Of a stretch of DNA of 64,000 bases, positions 7,776 to 48,361 are shown piece after piece. Position 1 is the stretch's first letter. The number at the start of each line of letters is the position of its first letter. Below the pieces are notes generated by a model that was not told the origin of the DNA, searched no databases, and saw only the letters and a program-made list of their open reading frames with translations. The position numbers and the translations under genes are program-made. This DNA comes from Oculina patagonica (taxonomy: Eukaryota): contig NC_135761.1 of NCBI RefSeq assembly GCF_052425735.1, forward strand, positions 6,448,001-6,512,000, written 5' to 3'.

Positions 7776-8460
7776 CTTCTTGCTATGGTAAAATTGCTGG
7801 TTTATATCAATGTTTTTAAAACACCTCCAATACAGACGCCATTTTGTATTTTGTGTCGCAAAGTACGCTGGGAAGACTTGTCCCAATCTCCCAGTGTTTC
7901 ACGCCGCGCGCACGAGCCCGGGAGGAAGGAGGGGGGGGGGGGCATAAGCTAAAATACGCCTGTTTATTCAGAAGTTGAAAAAATTAGCCATTCCGCAGCC
8001 GTTCTGGGAACATGATTTGTGAGTTCAACTGTTTCATTAGGATCGGCACATAAAAAGGTTCGGCGTCTGATCCGATTCAAAGTCGTGACGACCCAAAGAA
8101 CGGCTGACTATCATATGCCATTACTGGGAGAAGTAAAGAGAATACTACAACACGTGGGAACAAGAAGAAACTGTGCTTCGTATCTCTGCGGGAAAGTAAT
8201 GACGGCTTTTTGGTCCCTTACCATAAAAATACCGCCTTTCGCTTACGGGGAAGACCGCAAAATCCAAACATTTAACGGTTGGTCGTGTGATATCAAAACT
8301 GCTAAGCGAAGTAGTTTCAGTTTCTTTTTTAGAATTCACGGAAGTGTATATACCTATAGCGAGTTGTATGTAAATTTCACAAATATATTTACTTATAATC
8401 ACTTTATCTGTTCGATCTTTGTGGCAAACTGAGGTAAGTAAAAAACTATTTCGATAACTG

Positions 8461-11400
8461 GGTCACAATCCCTTCGACTCATGTTGCGACTGGGCACAAC
8501 TCTGAGTTACTGAAATGGCTTGATCTACAATGTTTCATTCTAGGACTGAGTACTGCTCAGGGCCGATATGATTTATATATCTTGCACATAAATTGCTGGC
8601 TAACGCATTTCCATACAATAAAAAGTTGAACGTCCCTTGCAACTTCTGGCCGGTATCAAGGCTCGGCCGGGAAGTAATGAAAAACTGACCCGAAGGAACA
8701 ACAAGCTACCTCTGTAACTACCTCTGTCAAGCGACCGCCGCAACTGATGGCTAACAAAGTAGTTTGACTTCAAAATTTTGCAAAAATCCATCCTTGGCTG
8801 TTTCTTGGAATCCGGCATAATTCAGTTGCTCACCACTAAACAAGTATACAAACTGAACCGCTGCAGGTAGTTTCCTTCCTGACACACTCTGACTCTACAA
8901 CTGCATTTTAAAAAAATCATAATAAATCATAATAGTGTTTTACTGAATTTCTGTCGAGTGAGATCAAACTTTAATGGTTATGGATTTTGTATAAAGAAAT
9001 TGATATTTTGAACAGTTTTGTTTCTTGGAAATTCACAATTCTCTGACTGGGCATTGTGCGATCAATTTTGACAATGAAAAAACAATGTGAGTGACTCATG
9101 AAGCCAGCGTGACCTAACTGTGCTCAGGAGTTCATCCGGTCTGTGCTTATCAAGCATGTCAAGTTACACTTTGTAACTTAATTTTAGTTTCAAAAATAAT
9201 TTATAGTTAGAAAGATCTACGAACCCTTTTTCCCACAACAAAAAATGCTTTCTCGTAAAGCATTTTTCTGTACTTAGTCTTGTATCTTTTTTTAATGTGC
9301 GCTTTCCTATTTTCTTGGAAATGCTGAAATGTAAATTCAATCTATGCTGAGACTATGACTTCCAAGGATGTGCAAAATGACGCTAGCTAAACCAGACCTG
9401 GGCAGCTATGCAGACAGTTTGATCTTTTGATAATGACTGAAAGCATATCAAAAAAAATCCCCGCGAGCTGCTCCTTTTTCGTAGAACTCGGTCGGCTACA
9501 TCAGTTCTGTATCACACTGTCAAAGCTATTCATCAAATCCATACCATGTAAGAGTTCCCATTGATTTGGAATAAAACTTCGTTTTTGTCTACGAAACGCT
9601 GCAGTAAAGTTTCAGAAAACCTTGAGTGATCTTCTTCTTAACTCTGACTCGGCGGACATCAGGAAAATTTCAAATCCATGCAACCGGTCTGCACTGACCG
9701 CGAATCAGTCTCATTTCTATTAAGTGGAAGGCACCATTTGCAATTTCGTTTGCCTCGAAACTATCACTGAGTCATAATTGCAGTAGGTAAAAAAAAAGGC
9801 GTTAAAACAAATAGGAAGATATTCTTACAGTCCGTTTCTTGGTTCTTCTAACCCTAAAGCTTTTTGTTTTAAAACAAATTCGATGTGTCTTGCTTTTTCT
9901 TGGAAATGTTGACAGGGAAAAAGGGAATCTTAATAGAGAGGACGGGCTCCTTGGTCAGCGGCTGGTGGTGTAACATCAAAACTGCTTCACGAAGCATTTT
10001 CACTTTCTTTTTAGAAACATAAAGGTGCATTTGCCTTAAGTAGCGTGTTGTGCGTACAGTTCTCAAATAGATACTCATAGCCTTTTTATATGCTCGATCT
10101 TTGAGGTAAGTATGGTTTTCTTTTCCTTCTGCTTCAGTACAGTTTATAAGGTGACCTCTTGCTGAAATGTTTCTCGATCGCTTGGTCACAATCCGTTCGA
10201 GTCGTGATACGAATGGGCACAACTCTGAGTCACTGAACTGACTTGATCAACAATGATTCCCGCTTTAAATGAGTACTGCTCAAGGCGTTATGGTTTATAT
10301 TGCACATGAATTGCTGGCTTACGTATAGCTTTCTGAACATTCCCTTAACAATCGACCATAATGAGAAGTTGAATGTCGATCTTTTTCATCTTCGGACAAT
10401 AAAGTCAATGAAGTTTTAGCCGGGAAGTACGTAATGATGGAAAACTAACATGAAGAGAGAAAAAGCTACCTCTATCTATAACCTCAATATCCTCTTTCAT
10501 CAGGCAAAGGTAAATCGGTTTGAAGTCACCTCACTGAACGTTTTGTAAATATCTTTCTCCGAAATGTTTCGGCTTGGAATCCGGAAGCCGTCATTCGGTT
10601 GTACTGTCAGACAAGTTTACTAACTGTACTGCCGTAGATAATTTTCTTTCTAACGCATCTCGAATCTGCATTTTTTTTAATTATGATGGCGTTTTACCCC
10701 ACTGAAATTGGGTAAAGTTTGTTCGATCAGTGGATTACAGGAACTTTTATATACCCAAGGCTGGTCCGTCGAGGACTTGCAAATAGAACGTTTACGTACG
10801 ATTTACTGCTTTGTCTCGGCGAATTTTGTTCTAGGAAGAGATCAATAAATAATCAAAACGGCAGATAACGTTTTGAGTTATTTATTTTGTAATAAACGAA
10901 GTGTCGAAGTTAGTCTTGGTCAGTTTCGTTTCTTGGAAATGCATACTCTAGTGACTCGTGACTCCAGCGTGACCTTTTAATATACGTTTTGCTTCATTTC
11001 AATGTCATGGAAATGTTAAGATGGATTTTACTGCAGAAGCAATTCCTTAAAAAGAGTTTTAAAATAACACCGGCTAAACCAAATCTTGCCAGTGTGATCT
11101 CTAGGTAATAAATACGAGTCAAAGGCGTATCGGAAACTTATAACAAAAGCTTACCTGCGTCTAGTTCTTTTTCCGGGAAAACTCGGCCAGCATATCCATC
11201 ACATCAGTTATTCATCAAAGCCATATACTTCTGGTGCATAAAGAGCCTGTATGGATTAAGCGCATATCTCCATTTTTGCCTTCGATAATTTAAGCTGCAA
11301 TAAAGTTCAAAACCTTGTCAGAACAAGGCCAGTTCTCTTCCTTTAATATATCGTCCTTGGCTTCTGTAAGCCATGAGTGATTTTCGTCTCGACGATTAGT

Positions 11401-47600: not shown

Positions 47601-48361
47601 TACGGGCCTGTTAAGCCGCTAAGTTGAGTACTTCAAACATCCACTTTTCGAAAACCCTTTAAATTTACGTTGAACAATAAAAATTACAATGTTTCACGAA
47701 AAAGATGTTAAATCACGTTTTGAAGTTTTCAAACGCTTACGGGACAGCTTTTTGAAAAGAAGTAAGAAACACGGTTTACAGTCACATTTCGCAAGAAGAA
47801 AACAAAATACATTTCGTAATTTCATGAAAAAGAAGTCAATTAATGGTCCACGGCTATATAACCAAATTACGTTTCATGAGAAAAAATAGCCATGCATTTC
47901 ACGATTCACGAAAACTGAATTTTCCTTTACTACCCTATGATATATTCCCCACCACTGGCGGAAAAATTCACTTTTTATAACTATTTTAAACTTAACGCGG
48001 AAAGATGAAAAAACTGCACCTGCTATTCAGATAGTCGTTTTAATGTTCACTTTTCTTTTCTTTAGTTTTTACCGGTGGAGTTTTTGGAGTTGCTGGACTA
48101 GCTATGTCCGCAGTTTTTGGGGCAACTGCAGGTGCGTTTGGTACAGCCATCACAACCTCTGGATTGGCCGCTTTAATCCAAGTATCAAAGCGTGAACGGT
48201 TACTTACAATAAAATTCGACGATTTGGAGTCTAAATTGAAAACGATGAAAAAGTTTTACAACAAGAAGGAGGTTGACATGGAAGCCCTGTCTAAATATTT
48301 TGACTATTTGGTGCAAGTATCCGATAACCTGTTGTCCTCCAACGCAGGAGTAGCTCTTTAG
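44606..48361 (+). CDS. Uncharacterised helical protein with Gly/Ala-rich hydrophobic hairpin (ApoL/ClyA-like architecture), cluster gene C (288 aa)
   Basis: Exons 44606-44953, 45045-45267 and 48066-48361, phases 0 and 1, 867 nt open. Central segment YAVGAGIVTIGLTFFTGGVFGVAGLAMSAVFGATAGAFGTAITTSGLAALI is flanked by charged heptad-like helices. Confidence 0.78.
46498..47610. mobile_element. Non-autonomous DNA transposon with nested Harbinger-like MITE (46969-47326), intron 2 of gene C
   Basis: CAGGCCCGTA / TACGGGCCTG termini flanked by TTAAG; inner GGCCATCCCC / GGGGATGGCC with TTA on both sides. Confidence 0.7.

What the first reader, a model, noticed from the sequence alone, without database searches (positions are those of the whole stretch)
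8002..48361. Candidate interferon-like inducible effector locus: three unrecognised membrane-hairpin genes, each behind STAT/IRF(/NF-kB) motif arrays
Seen: three co-oriented 3-exon genes (A 16509-18485, B 25227-27318, C 44606-48361), fragmented in the ORF track. They share intron phases (0,1), an apparent splice acceptor just before the ATG, and a second intron inside the hydrophobic region. Each is preceded by TTCNNNGAA and ISRE-like motifs; B and C also have kB-like motifs. Established: GAS, ISRE and kB sites are the regulatory grammar of vertebrate interferon-stimulated genes. Cnidarians have STAT, IRF, NF-kB and cGAS-STING but no recognised interferon. Inference: this is a tandem family of immune-induced, membrane-active effectors in an early-branching animal.
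Basis: partly seen in the sequence, partly recalled or inferred. Interest (0 to 1): 0.88.

Follow-up and report, generated by a model that had tools for sequence, protein, structure and literature searches.

The report
Coral hairpin-protein genes behind STAT-type motif arrays
A stony-coral locus holds real, spliced genes for previously undescribed membrane-hairpin proteins. Their upstream DNA is packed with STAT-type binding motifs that are conserved in another coral, which gives a concrete place to test what STAT signalling does in an animal without interferon.

Summary
The window is Oculina patagonica chromosome DNA (C4:6448001-6512000).

**Genes.** All three genes are real, with the stated exons and intron phases (0,1).
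- Gene A's splicing is shown by RNA-like contigs from four runs. These also reveal a 5' non-coding exon ending at 14085, so A's promoter lies inside the motif array.
- A and B are paralogues of a family found only in stony corals. It has no Pfam or PDB sequence match.
- C shares the exon plan but has no detectable sequence similarity to A or B.

**Motifs.**
- The TTCNNNGAA excess is real. There are 27 sites in 8 kb, against 0.49 per kb in 200 kb of random genome.
- The excess is specific to the 3-base spacing and is mostly of the STAT5 type (TTCYNRGAA, about 29-fold over background).
- A syntenic contig of another coral (dS about 0.6) keeps 8 of 11 alignable sites (P = 5e-4).
- Gene B's upstream module also keeps three such sites and a kB-like palindrome.
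- ISRE-like matches are not conserved.
- Gene C's upstream region is not enriched.

**Not shown.** STAT binding, immune induction and membrane-damaging activity were not tested. ApoL and ClyA resemblances stay within noise.

**Verdict.** First-stage notes on this same window had already flagged the array and the A/B paralogy.

The parts
8002..16069 (.). Array of 27 TTC-N3-GAA palindromes, 20 of them TTCYNRGAA. It lies in diverged, locally duplicated non-coding units of about 1.5-1.9 kb. It spans the region upstream of A's promoter, the promoter itself and A's first intron.
   Evidence: A colinear orthologous array holds 25 sites in 10 kb. Of 11 alignable sites, 8 are conserved against a 22% background.
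13885..13893 (+). Promoter-proximal site TTCTTGGAA of gene A, about 130-200 bp upstream of the 5' exon donor.
   Evidence: Kept exactly in one orthologous promoter copy and as TTCTCGGAA in the other. The adjacent GTGAAAAC (ISRE-like half) is not kept.
13947..13952 (.). CACGTG E-box in A's promoter.
   Evidence: Conserved in both orthologous promoter copies.
14020..14085 (+). Gene A 5' non-coding exon. The donor follows 14085. The true start is unknown, but at least 63 nt are covered by a contig.
   Evidence: Joint 14085|16475 with GT..AG ends in runs X1 and X6. The exon and donor are conserved in the orthologue.
16475..16934 (+). Gene A exon 2, with the CDS starting at the ATG at 16509.
   Evidence: The N-terminal 54 codons are conserved in B and in orthologues but are missing from the NCBI model.
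17430..17664 (+). Gene A exon 3, which ends inside the first hydrophobic helix (phase 1).
   Evidence: Joints seen in up to four runs. Matches P0001.
18169..18485 (+). Gene A exon 4: end of hydrophobic helix 1, short loop, hydrophobic helix 2, and the conserved C-terminal helix up to the stop codon.
23272..24166 (.). Gene B upstream module with 5 TTC-N3-GAA sites. Those at 23725, 23957 and 24158 have counterparts with the same flanks upstream of the orthologous B (two of them also upstream of its duplicate B') and in four tandem 1.78-kb copies at C4:6512001-6522000.
24570..24579 (.). kB-like palindrome GGGAATCCCC, about 650 bp upstream of B's ATG.
   Evidence: The orthologue has GGGGAATTCCCC at a similar place.
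25227..25670 (+). Gene B coding exon 1. A candidate acceptor AG lies at 25196-25197, before the ATG.
   Evidence: The orthologue is 62% identical at the protein level with dN/dS 0.38. A paralogue lies on C4 at 6.77 Mb.
26531..26744 (+). Gene B coding exon 2 (phase 0 at the start, phase 1 at the end).
26933..27318 (+). Gene B coding exon 3: hydrophobic helix 1 end, a 35-45 residue S/T-rich loop, helix 2 and the conserved C-terminal helix.
44606..44953 (+). Gene C coding exon 1. A candidate acceptor AG lies at 44589-44590, before the ATG.
   Evidence: Held in RNA-like runs.
45045..45267 (+). Gene C coding exon 2, which ends in the Gly-rich hydrophobic stretch (phase 1).
48066..48361 (+). Gene C coding exon 3: the rest of the roughly 45-residue Gly-zipper-like hydrophobic stretch and a C-terminal helix.
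   Evidence: An 86% identical product exists in a close relative. A weak paralogue lies at C4:6561889-6562101.
41321..43068 (.). Repeated module upstream of C. It is an 86-92% copy of 30184-31488 and is related to DNA beside the B paralogue.
   Evidence: Only 4 TTC-N3-GAA sites fall in 41300-44600, which is not enriched.

Best explanation
The stretch holds a small cluster of stony-coral-restricted genes for all-helical proteins. In each protein, long coiled-coil arms flank a two-helix hydrophobic hairpin.

**Shown**
- A and B are paralogues of one undescribed family.
- C belongs to a second, narrower family with the same exon plan.
- A is transcribed from a promoter 2.4 kb upstream of its ATG, through a 5' non-coding exon.
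- That promoter, the 6 kb upstream of it and the first intron consist of locally duplicated non-coding modules. These carry about 30-fold more STAT5-type palindromes (TTCYNRGAA, 3-base spacing only) than the genome average.
- B has its own module type with three such sites and a kB-like palindrome.
- The sites are kept at orthologous positions in another coral, although synonymous sites are about 60% diverged (dS about 0.6).

**Inferred**
- The palindromes are selected transcription-factor binding sites. The likeliest reader is the coral STAT, with an NF-kB-like input for B and a bHLH E-box input for A. Expression would therefore be signal-dependent rather than constitutive.
- The proteins have no signal peptide and carry two transmembrane-grade helices. 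They probably insert into an internal membrane with both helical arms in the cytosol and the variable loop on the far side.
- The proteins evolve fast, are lineage-restricted, and vary in copy number of both genes and modules. This points to a defence or stress role, at roughly one chance in three. No stimulus has been tested.
For: **Gene models**
- Splice joints and the 5' exon come from contigs of four runs.
- An NCBI protein has the same coding junctions.
- A against B: 27% identity over the full length, E = 6e-15.

**Family**
- Only 28 hits in 1.84 billion representative proteins. The only hit with a source name is an 'uncharacterized protein' of Stylophora; the others looked up are unnamed contig products.
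- No Pfam or PDB sequence match.
- The AlphaFold model built with the family alignment has pLDDT 80 and four long helices. The hydrophobic hairpin sits at the turn between the last two helices.
- Hydropathy gives two transmembrane-grade segments in A and B and one 45-residue Gly-rich stretch in C.
- dN/dS is 0.3-0.7 at dS of about 0.4-0.75, mostly about 0.6.

**Motifs**
- Counts against shuffles and against 200 kb of random genome.
- Specificity for the 3-base spacing.
- A colinear orthologous array.
- 8 of 11 aligned sites conserved against a 22% background, P = 5e-4.
- Conserved promoter site and E-box.
- Conserved B-module sites and kB-like palindrome, plus four tandem module copies just beyond the window.

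**Context from the literature and genome**
- A STAT5A homologue is up-regulated in poly(I:C)-activated Nematostella cells (PMC13319465).
- IRF DNA-binding domains are present at 7 loci in this genome.
Against: - No binding, chromatin or expression-response data exist for this locus.
- STAT Pfam domains were not found by the exon-wise six-frame search of this genome. This is inconclusive for a multi-exon domain.
- Knock-down of nvSTAT or the nvIRFs did not change the cGAMP response in Nematostella (PMC8713801).
- Only 11 of 29 non-exonic sites between 10 and 28 kb fall in alignable blocks.
- Part of the site density is inherited through duplication of modules.
- C's upstream region is not enriched, and C is not demonstrably related to A or B.
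- The membrane topology is inferred from sequence and a model only.
Confidence: 0.5

Rival explanations
1. The locus is an interferon-like, pathogen-induced regulon (STAT plus IRF plus NF-kB), and its products are membrane-damaging effectors that form pores or act like detergents, in the manner of ApoL or ClyA-type proteins.
For: - Conserved GAS-type sites and a kB-like site.
- Fast evolution and copy-number turnover.
- The top Foldseek PDB rows for the A model are pore forms of ClyA-family toxins: AhlB E = 0.024, ClyA TM 0.53. VIA-align gives Z = 11.9 for ClyA and 11.8 for AhlC.
- Language-model features of C exon 3 are nearest to ApoL clusters, at 0.81-0.83.
Against: - ISRE-like sequences are not conserved.
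- The fold scores lie inside the noise range that the tool states for long helical bundles (Z under about 13). Designed bundles, syntaxins and chemoreceptors score alike.
- Pfam ApoL finds 26 loci elsewhere in this genome but none in this window.
- The atlas score is below 0.9, which the tool treats as a lead only.
- There is no signal peptide.
- The hydrophobic helices look like ordinary membrane anchors.
- No induction data exist, and the nvSTAT and nvIRF knock-downs were negative for cGAMP (PMC8713801).
Confidence: 0.2
2. The palindromes are real binding sites, but they belong to a developmental, nutritional, symbiosis-related or cell-type-specific programme. The reader could be STAT acting outside immunity, or another factor that reads TTC-N3-GAA. 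The proteins would be structural membrane or coiled-coil scaffolds of a coral-specific cell type or organelle.
For: - The same conservation evidence applies.
- A conserved CACGTG E-box sits beside A's site.
- Transcripts are present in ordinary, unchallenged-looking runs of three organism labels.
- The best-conserved part of the protein is a cytosolic C-terminal helix, which is typical of an interaction module.
Against: - dN/dS of 0.3-0.7 and gene or module copy-number changes between related corals are high for structural housekeeping proteins.
- The kB-like palindrome upstream of B is conserved.
Confidence: 0.22
3. The motif density is only a by-product of repeated tandem duplication of one promoter fragment. 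Most copies would be functionless relics.
For: - The array consists of diverged 1.5-1.9 kb units.
- The orthologue has duplicated a 5-kb segment that includes the promoter and 5' exon.
- The locus just beyond the window holds four 90-94% identical copies of the B module.
Against: - The units are old: 65-80% identical and colinear between species.
- They nevertheless keep the six specified bases, and often the spacer, far more often than flanking aligned DNA does (73% against 22%).
- At pS of about 0.43, a neutral 6-base site would survive about 3% of the time.
- Only the 3-base spacing is enriched.
Confidence: 0.08

Closest known systems
Vertebrate GAS-driven interferon-stimulated genes, including STAT5-type sites (TTCYNRGAA) in homotypic clusters
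   Same: - Palindrome with strict 3-base spacing, mostly TTCTTGGAA, TTCTAAGAA or TTCTGGGAA.
- Several sites per promoter or enhancer.
- A kB-like co-site for B.
- Conserved between species.
   Different: - Cnidarians have no known interferon (PMC8713801). From my own knowledge, they also have no recognised JAK.
- ISRE-like elements are not conserved here.
- Binding and inducibility are untested.
- The arrays are built from duplicated kilobase-sized modules.
Apolipoprotein L family (Pfam PF05461)
   Same: - Helical protein with a Gly-rich hydrophobic hairpin between helical arms. This resemblance is strongest for C.
- From my own knowledge, vertebrate ApoLs are interferon-induced and membrane-active.
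- ESM features of C exon 3 are nearest to ApoL clusters, at 0.81-0.83.
   Different: - No Pfam ApoL match to any exon or to P0001.
- The genome-wide ApoL scan finds 26 loci elsewhere and none here.
- Bona fide ApoL genes in this genome are mostly single long ORFs, whereas these genes have three coding exons.
ClyA-family alpha-pore-forming toxins (ClyA, AhlB/AhlC, YaxB, SmhB, MakA)
   Same: An elongated bundle of very long helices with a hydrophobic hairpin at one end. These toxins are the top Foldseek PDB rows, and VIA-align gives Z of about 12.
   Different: - E-values are 0.02 or weaker, rmsd is 7-17 A, and sequence identity is 5-13%.
- Unrelated helical bundles score the same.
- There is no secretion signal.
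- The hydrophobic helices are of transmembrane-anchor grade.
Stylophora pistillata uncharacterized protein LOC111332882 (XP_022794085.1 / A0A2B4S4I4)
   Same: A true homologue of A and B: E = 2.5e-11 and 31% identity over 200 residues, with the same helical arms, hairpin and C-terminal motif. Nine TTC-N3-GAA sites lie 5.4-9.7 kb upstream of its ATG.
   Different: It has no DNA-level synteny or alignment with the window. It is uncharacterised, and no paper in the searched library mentions it.

Membership tests
Apolipoprotein L (PF05461) | Significant match to the ApoL profile | tested here: not met
   There was no ApoL hit for any of the nine exon translations at E <= 10, or for P0001. The six-frame scan of the whole genome gives 26 ApoL matches, none of them in C4:6448001-6512000. 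The only hint is a weak feature similarity of C exon 3, at 0.83.
ClyA-family alpha-pore-forming toxins | Fold match clearly above unrelated helical bundles | tested here: inconclusive
   The best Foldseek E-value is 0.024 and the ClyA TM-score is 0.53. VIA-align gives Z = 11.9 (ClyA) and 11.8 (AhlC), ranked among designed bundles and syntaxins. The tool's own note says Z under about 13 is uninformative for long helices.
ClyA-family alpha-pore-forming toxins | Soluble secreted form that inserts into target membranes | not testable with these tools
   No signal peptide is evident, and the hydrophobic segments score as ordinary transmembrane helices. Testing this needs biochemistry.
IFI6/IFI27 (ISG12) and IFITM/CD225 small interferon-induced membrane proteins | Match to the family profiles | tested here: not met
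   The Pfam scans of all exon pieces, P0001 and four homologues list neither family.
A/B coral hairpin family (undescribed; defined here) | Significant full-length similarity, including the conserved C-terminal motif after the second hydrophobic helix | tested here: met
   A and B meet it: E = 6e-15 pairwise, and family-HMM E-values of 5e-55 and 3e-47. C does not: E = 0.074 against the HMM and above 0.4 pairwise.
STAT-regulated (GAS-containing) genes | TTC-N3-GAA palindromes near the promoter, more than chance | tested here: met
   Met for A and B. The sites are promoter-proximal for A, given the mapped 5' exon. Not met for C.
STAT-regulated (GAS-containing) genes | Sites under selection | tested here: met
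   8 of 11 aligned sites are conserved against a 22% background, P = 5e-4, at dS of about 0.6. The B-module sites are conserved with their flanks.
STAT-regulated (GAS-containing) genes | STAT occupancy and STAT-dependent expression | not testable with these tools
   No ChIP, CUT&RUN or knock-down data are reachable. STAT domains were not recovered by the exon-wise search of this genome, which is inconclusive.
Interferon-stimulated-gene-like regulon (GAS + ISRE + kB, pathogen-induced) | Conserved ISRE | tested here: not met
   The ISRE-like sequences beside the A site (13894-13901) and the B site (23983-23998) are not kept in the orthologue. The array itself holds only 2 GAAANNGAAA matches.
Interferon-stimulated-gene-like regulon (GAS + ISRE + kB, pathogen-induced) | Induction by immune stimuli | not tested

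The most novel reading that the evidence does not exclude
The N3-specific palindrome arrays mark direct targets of the single cnidarian STAT. On this reading, this chromosome neighbourhood (C4 6.45-6.77 Mb) is a STAT/NF-kB-driven, stimulus-induced battery of coral-specific membrane-hairpin effectors. That would make it a functional analogue of vertebrate GAS-driven ApoL-type ISGs, in an animal with no interferon and no recognised JAK.
Probability: 0.2. Interest if true: 0.85.

Novelty: new variant of a known kind. Interest (0 to 1): 0.62.

Why it matters
What STAT does in cnidarians is an open question. They have a STAT gene and IRFs but no interferon, and knock-downs in Nematostella gave no phenotype in the cGAMP response (PMC8713801).

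This locus offers a sharply defined, testable candidate target set:
- conserved STAT5-type sites at about 30-fold over background and specific to one spacing;
- a mapped promoter for gene A;
- a second module type with a kB-like site for gene B.

The products are two undescribed, fast-evolving, coral-restricted families of membrane-hairpin proteins.

Microinjection and knock-down tools exist in a hard coral, Astrangia poculata (PMC12085026). The prediction can therefore be tested directly.

If the result is negative, the locus would still document an unusual case: homotypic transcription-factor site arrays maintained through repeated module duplication.

Tried and rejected
- **Minus-strand exons in the array.** I first suspected that the motifs sat in exons of a minus-strand tandem gene, because 'cttacctg' next to two sites reads as a minus-strand donor. 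tblastx shows stops in all frames and no coding similarity between units. I dropped the idea.
- **High-copy transposon or satellite.** Rejected. Apart from a 23-nt minisatellite and a short repeat near 16.0-16.3 kb, the 8.4 kb is unique in the genome except for relatives in the same neighbourhood. TRF finds no array of the units.
- **Structure of A.** The single-sequence AlphaFold model was unusable (pLDDT 43.6). The model built with an alignment was used instead.
- **Fold and feature searches for A.** The AlphaFold DB cluster search and the ESM-atlas shape search returned only generic coiled-coil proteins. The ESM atlas feature search for A gave no usable hit.
- **Sequence searches for C.** C exon 1 found no homologue. 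C exon 3 found one close relative only, on an unspliced contig. PDB sequence search of C exon 3 gave noise.
- **Synteny walk.** Walking the orthologous contig downstream of B found a second B copy but no C.
- **Other family members nearby.** A search of the 30 kb after the window for further A/B/C family exons found none.
- **Genome-wide paired-site pattern.** It gave only 6 places and was not informative.
- **Literature.** Searches by gene identifiers, and for TTCNNNGAA in cnidarians, found nothing.

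
Full report
**Source.** The window is C4:6448001-6512000 of a 529-Mb assembly. A 100% identical database protein names the organism: 'hypothetical protein ACROYT_G011679 [Oculina patagonica]'.

**Gene models.** Reading the DNA and splicing it in a script gives three open reading frames, all with GT-AG introns:

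| Gene | Length | Coding exons |
|---|---|---|
| A | 326 aa | 16509-16934 / 17430-17664 / 18169-18485 |
| B | 348 aa | 25227-25670 / 26531-26744 / 26933-27318 |
| C | 289 aa | 44606-44953 / 45045-45267 / 48066-48361 |

- The introns are in phases 0 and 1 in all three genes, and the second intron lies inside the hydrophobic region in all three.
- The database protein P0001 has exactly A's two coding junctions but starts 54 codons later. Those 54 codons are conserved in B and in orthologues, so the ATG at 16509 is the better start.
- I laid contigs of four public runs on 12600-18599. The intron-skipping joints 16934|17430 (four runs) and 17664|18169 (three runs) have GT..AG ends.
- A further joint runs from 14085 to 16475, in two runs. 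Gene A therefore has a 5' non-coding exon, and its promoter lies near 14.0 kb, 2.4 kb upstream of the ATG.
- The runs are only guessed to be RNA by the index, but spliced joints show that they contain RNA.
- B is supported by a full three-exon paralogue at C4:6768115-6770256 on the minus strand (69-85% protein identity). It is also supported by an orthologue with dN/dS 0.30-0.38.
- C exons 1-2 are held at share 0.61 by the run that showed A's spliced joints with no sequence differences, and at about 0.5 by runs of another organism label.

**What the proteins are.**
- A and B are paralogues: 27% identity over the full length, E = 6e-15.
- A full HMMER scan of 1.84 billion representative proteins with P0001 found only 28 hits. 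Most are single-exon fragments on short contigs. The only named member among those looked up is an 'uncharacterized protein' of Stylophora pistillata.
- Pfam and PDB sequence searches give nothing significant for the exons, for P0001, for four homologues or for the family profile.
- With the 23-row family alignment, AlphaFold reaches pLDDT 80 and pTM 0.60. It predicts four long helices (13-50, 55-94, 104-178, 188-268), with the two hydrophobic segments flanking the turn between the last two.
- Hydropathy gives two transmembrane-grade segments in A and B, separated by a loop that is short in A, 35-45 residues in B, and variable across the family.
- The best-conserved part is the helix that follows the second hydrophobic segment.
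- Fold searches return ClyA-family pore forms among the top rows: Foldseek E = 0.024 for AhlB, TM 0.53 for ClyA, and VIA-align Z of 11.8-11.9. Designed bundles, syntaxin Habc domains, STAT coiled-coils and CorA/Mrs2 score alike. The tool's own calibration says Z under about 13 is uninformative for long helices. I treat the pore-former likeness as not excluded and not supported.
- C has no significant similarity to A or B: E > 0.4 pairwise and 0.074 against the family HMM. Its hydrophobic part is a continuous Gly-rich stretch of about 45 residues.
- C exon 1 found no homologue. C exon 3 found one 86% identical product in a close relative, on an unspliced contig.
- A weak paralogue with the same three-exon layout lies at C4:6560229-6562101.
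- Language-model features of C exon 3 are nearest to ApoL clusters, but at 0.81-0.83, below the level the tool treats as evidence.
- The Pfam ApoL profile finds 26 loci elsewhere in this genome and none in the window.
- 'Unrecognised' is therefore right. 'One tandem family of three' is not shown.

**The motif arrays.**
- TTCNNNGAA occurs 67 times in the window, against 28.4 +/- 4.7 in shuffles. Of these, 27 lie in 8002-16069.
- I sampled 200 kb from twenty random places on nine chromosomes. The genome rate is 0.485 per kb for TTCNNNGAA and 0.085 per kb for TTCYNRGAA.
- The array has 27 TTCNNNGAA and 20 TTCYNRGAA in 8.07 kb, which is 6.9-fold and 29-fold over the genome rate. Poisson P is about 2e-14 for TTCNNNGAA.
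- The excess is confined to the 3-base spacing: 27 sites at N3 against 0-5 for each of N0-N2 and N4-N7, and 2 for the reversed arrangement. In random DNA all spacings are equal. This rules out composition as the cause. From my own knowledge, it is the spacing preferred by metazoan STATs.
- The region is not a satellite or a high-copy transposon. It consists of old, diverged local duplications of 1.5-1.9 kb units, 65-80% identical, with stops in every frame.

**Conservation.**
- A 2.2-Mb contig of another coral (ENA ERZ25067872) is syntenic. I merged three overlapping loci into 38.5 kb.
- Coding divergence from it is dS of about 0.4-0.75, mostly about 0.6. Non-coding blocks nevertheless align colinearly at 64-90%.
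- That contig has the same picture: 25 sites in the 10 kb upstream of A's orthologue, none in the 4 kb before that, and smaller clusters upstream of B and of a second B copy.
- Of the 11 Oculina sites that fall in aligned non-coding blocks, 8 keep all six specified bases, usually with the spacer too. Only 22% of all 9-mers in the same blocks do so (binomial P = 5e-4).
- In A's promoter, the site at 13885 and a CACGTG box at 13947 are conserved in both orthologous promoter copies. So are the 5' exon and, in the one copy whose extract reaches it, the donor. The neighbouring ISRE-like GTGAAAAC and an AP-1-like TGACTCA are not conserved.
- In B's upstream module, the three sites at 23725, 23957 and 24158 recur with their flanks upstream of the orthologous B. 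Two of them also recur upstream of its duplicate B'. All three are present in four tandem 1.78-kb copies (90-94% identical) that lie just beyond the window at C4:6512001-6522000, a stretch with 18 TTCYNRGAA in 10 kb.
- The kB-like palindrome at 24570 has a GGGGAATTCCCC counterpart in the orthologue. The ISRE-like run after 23957 does not have one.
- kB matches as a class are not in excess.
- The ISRE core is in excess window-wide but not in the arrays.
- C's upstream 3.3 kb has 4 sites, no more than other spacings give. The C-like paralogue's upstream tandem units have a moderate excess (23 in 14.2 kb).

**Interpretation.**
- The sites behave as selected binding sites of a factor that reads TTC-N3-GAA. 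STAT is the obvious candidate. Nematostella has a single STAT gene (PMC8713801), and its STAT5A-like gene rises in poly(I:C)-activated cells (PMC13319465).
- I could not confirm a STAT gene in this assembly with the exon-wise Pfam search. IRF domains are present at seven loci.
- Against the interferon analogy, nvSTAT and nvIRF knock-downs did not change the cGAMP response (PMC8713801), and the ISRE-like elements here are not conserved.
- In favour of a defence- or stress-type role are lineage restriction, dN/dS of 0.3-0.7, turnover of gene and module copies between related corals, and the conserved kB-like site. All of this is circumstantial.
- My best reading, at about 0.5: these are STAT-type-site-driven, signal-dependent genes for hairpin-anchored coiled-coil membrane proteins of unknown role.

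**Earlier notes.** First-stage notes on this same window had already listed the array, the A/B paralogy and the ApoL/ClyA likeness of C. I tested the first two and they hold. The third remains a lead.

Noticed in passing
window 7353-7425: A 73-nt run of G marks the upstream edge of the motif array. A G-run lies at the matching place of the orthologous contig. It could be a boundary or a G-quadruplex element.
   Followed up: no
window 17932-18008: A tRNA-Thr(GGT)-like element lies in intron 2 of gene A. RNA-contig word depth over it exceeds 14,000 in two of the four runs and 5,800 in the other two. It is probably a multi-copy tRNA-derived SINE.
   Followed up: partly
window 12170-12281: A 23-nt minisatellite of 4.9 copies. 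It belongs to a family with arrays on several chromosomes, among them C1, C3, C7, C12 and C13. It sits between two array units.
   Followed up: no
L010 2959-9480 (C4:6514959-6521480): Four tandem 1.78-kb copies (90-94% identical) of the gene-B-type upstream module, each with four TTCYNRGAA sites. No A/B/C-type exon follows within 20 kb. A gag/protease-like retroelement ORF (L011 2381-3970, minus strand) comes next.
   Followed up: partly
L009 4229-6101 (C4:6560229-6562101): A C-like gene with the same three-exon layout. It is preceded by 4.5-kb tandem units that carry TTCTTGGAA, TTCTAAGAA and TTCCTAGAA. These units also match gene A's intron 1 (14813-15196) at about 69%.
   Followed up: partly
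window 503-1297: A single-exon ORF of 265 aa that matches Pfam FIT (fat storage-inducing transmembrane protein) at E = 4e-24.
   Followed up: yes
window 33981-37149 (minus strand): Four minus-strand ORFs of 133-154 aa with no Pfam match. By eye they look like a decayed DNA-transposon transposase.
   Followed up: no
window 30184-31488 and 41321-43068: An 86-92% identical duplicated segment within the window. It is related to DNA beside the B paralogue at C4 6.76 Mb, and each copy carries 2-3 TTCYNRGAA sites.
   Followed up: partly
window 16509-16670: The NCBI model ACROYT_G011679 starts at the second in-frame Met. The 54 upstream codons are conserved in B and in orthologues and are covered by RNA contigs.
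   Followed up: yes
window 11454-13128 (approx.): A 1675-nt unspliced contig at depth 11 in run X1 ends inside the array. Shorter low-depth contigs cover 12600-13500 and 14882-15049. These could be pre-mRNA, enhancer RNA or DNA carry-over.
   Followed up: no
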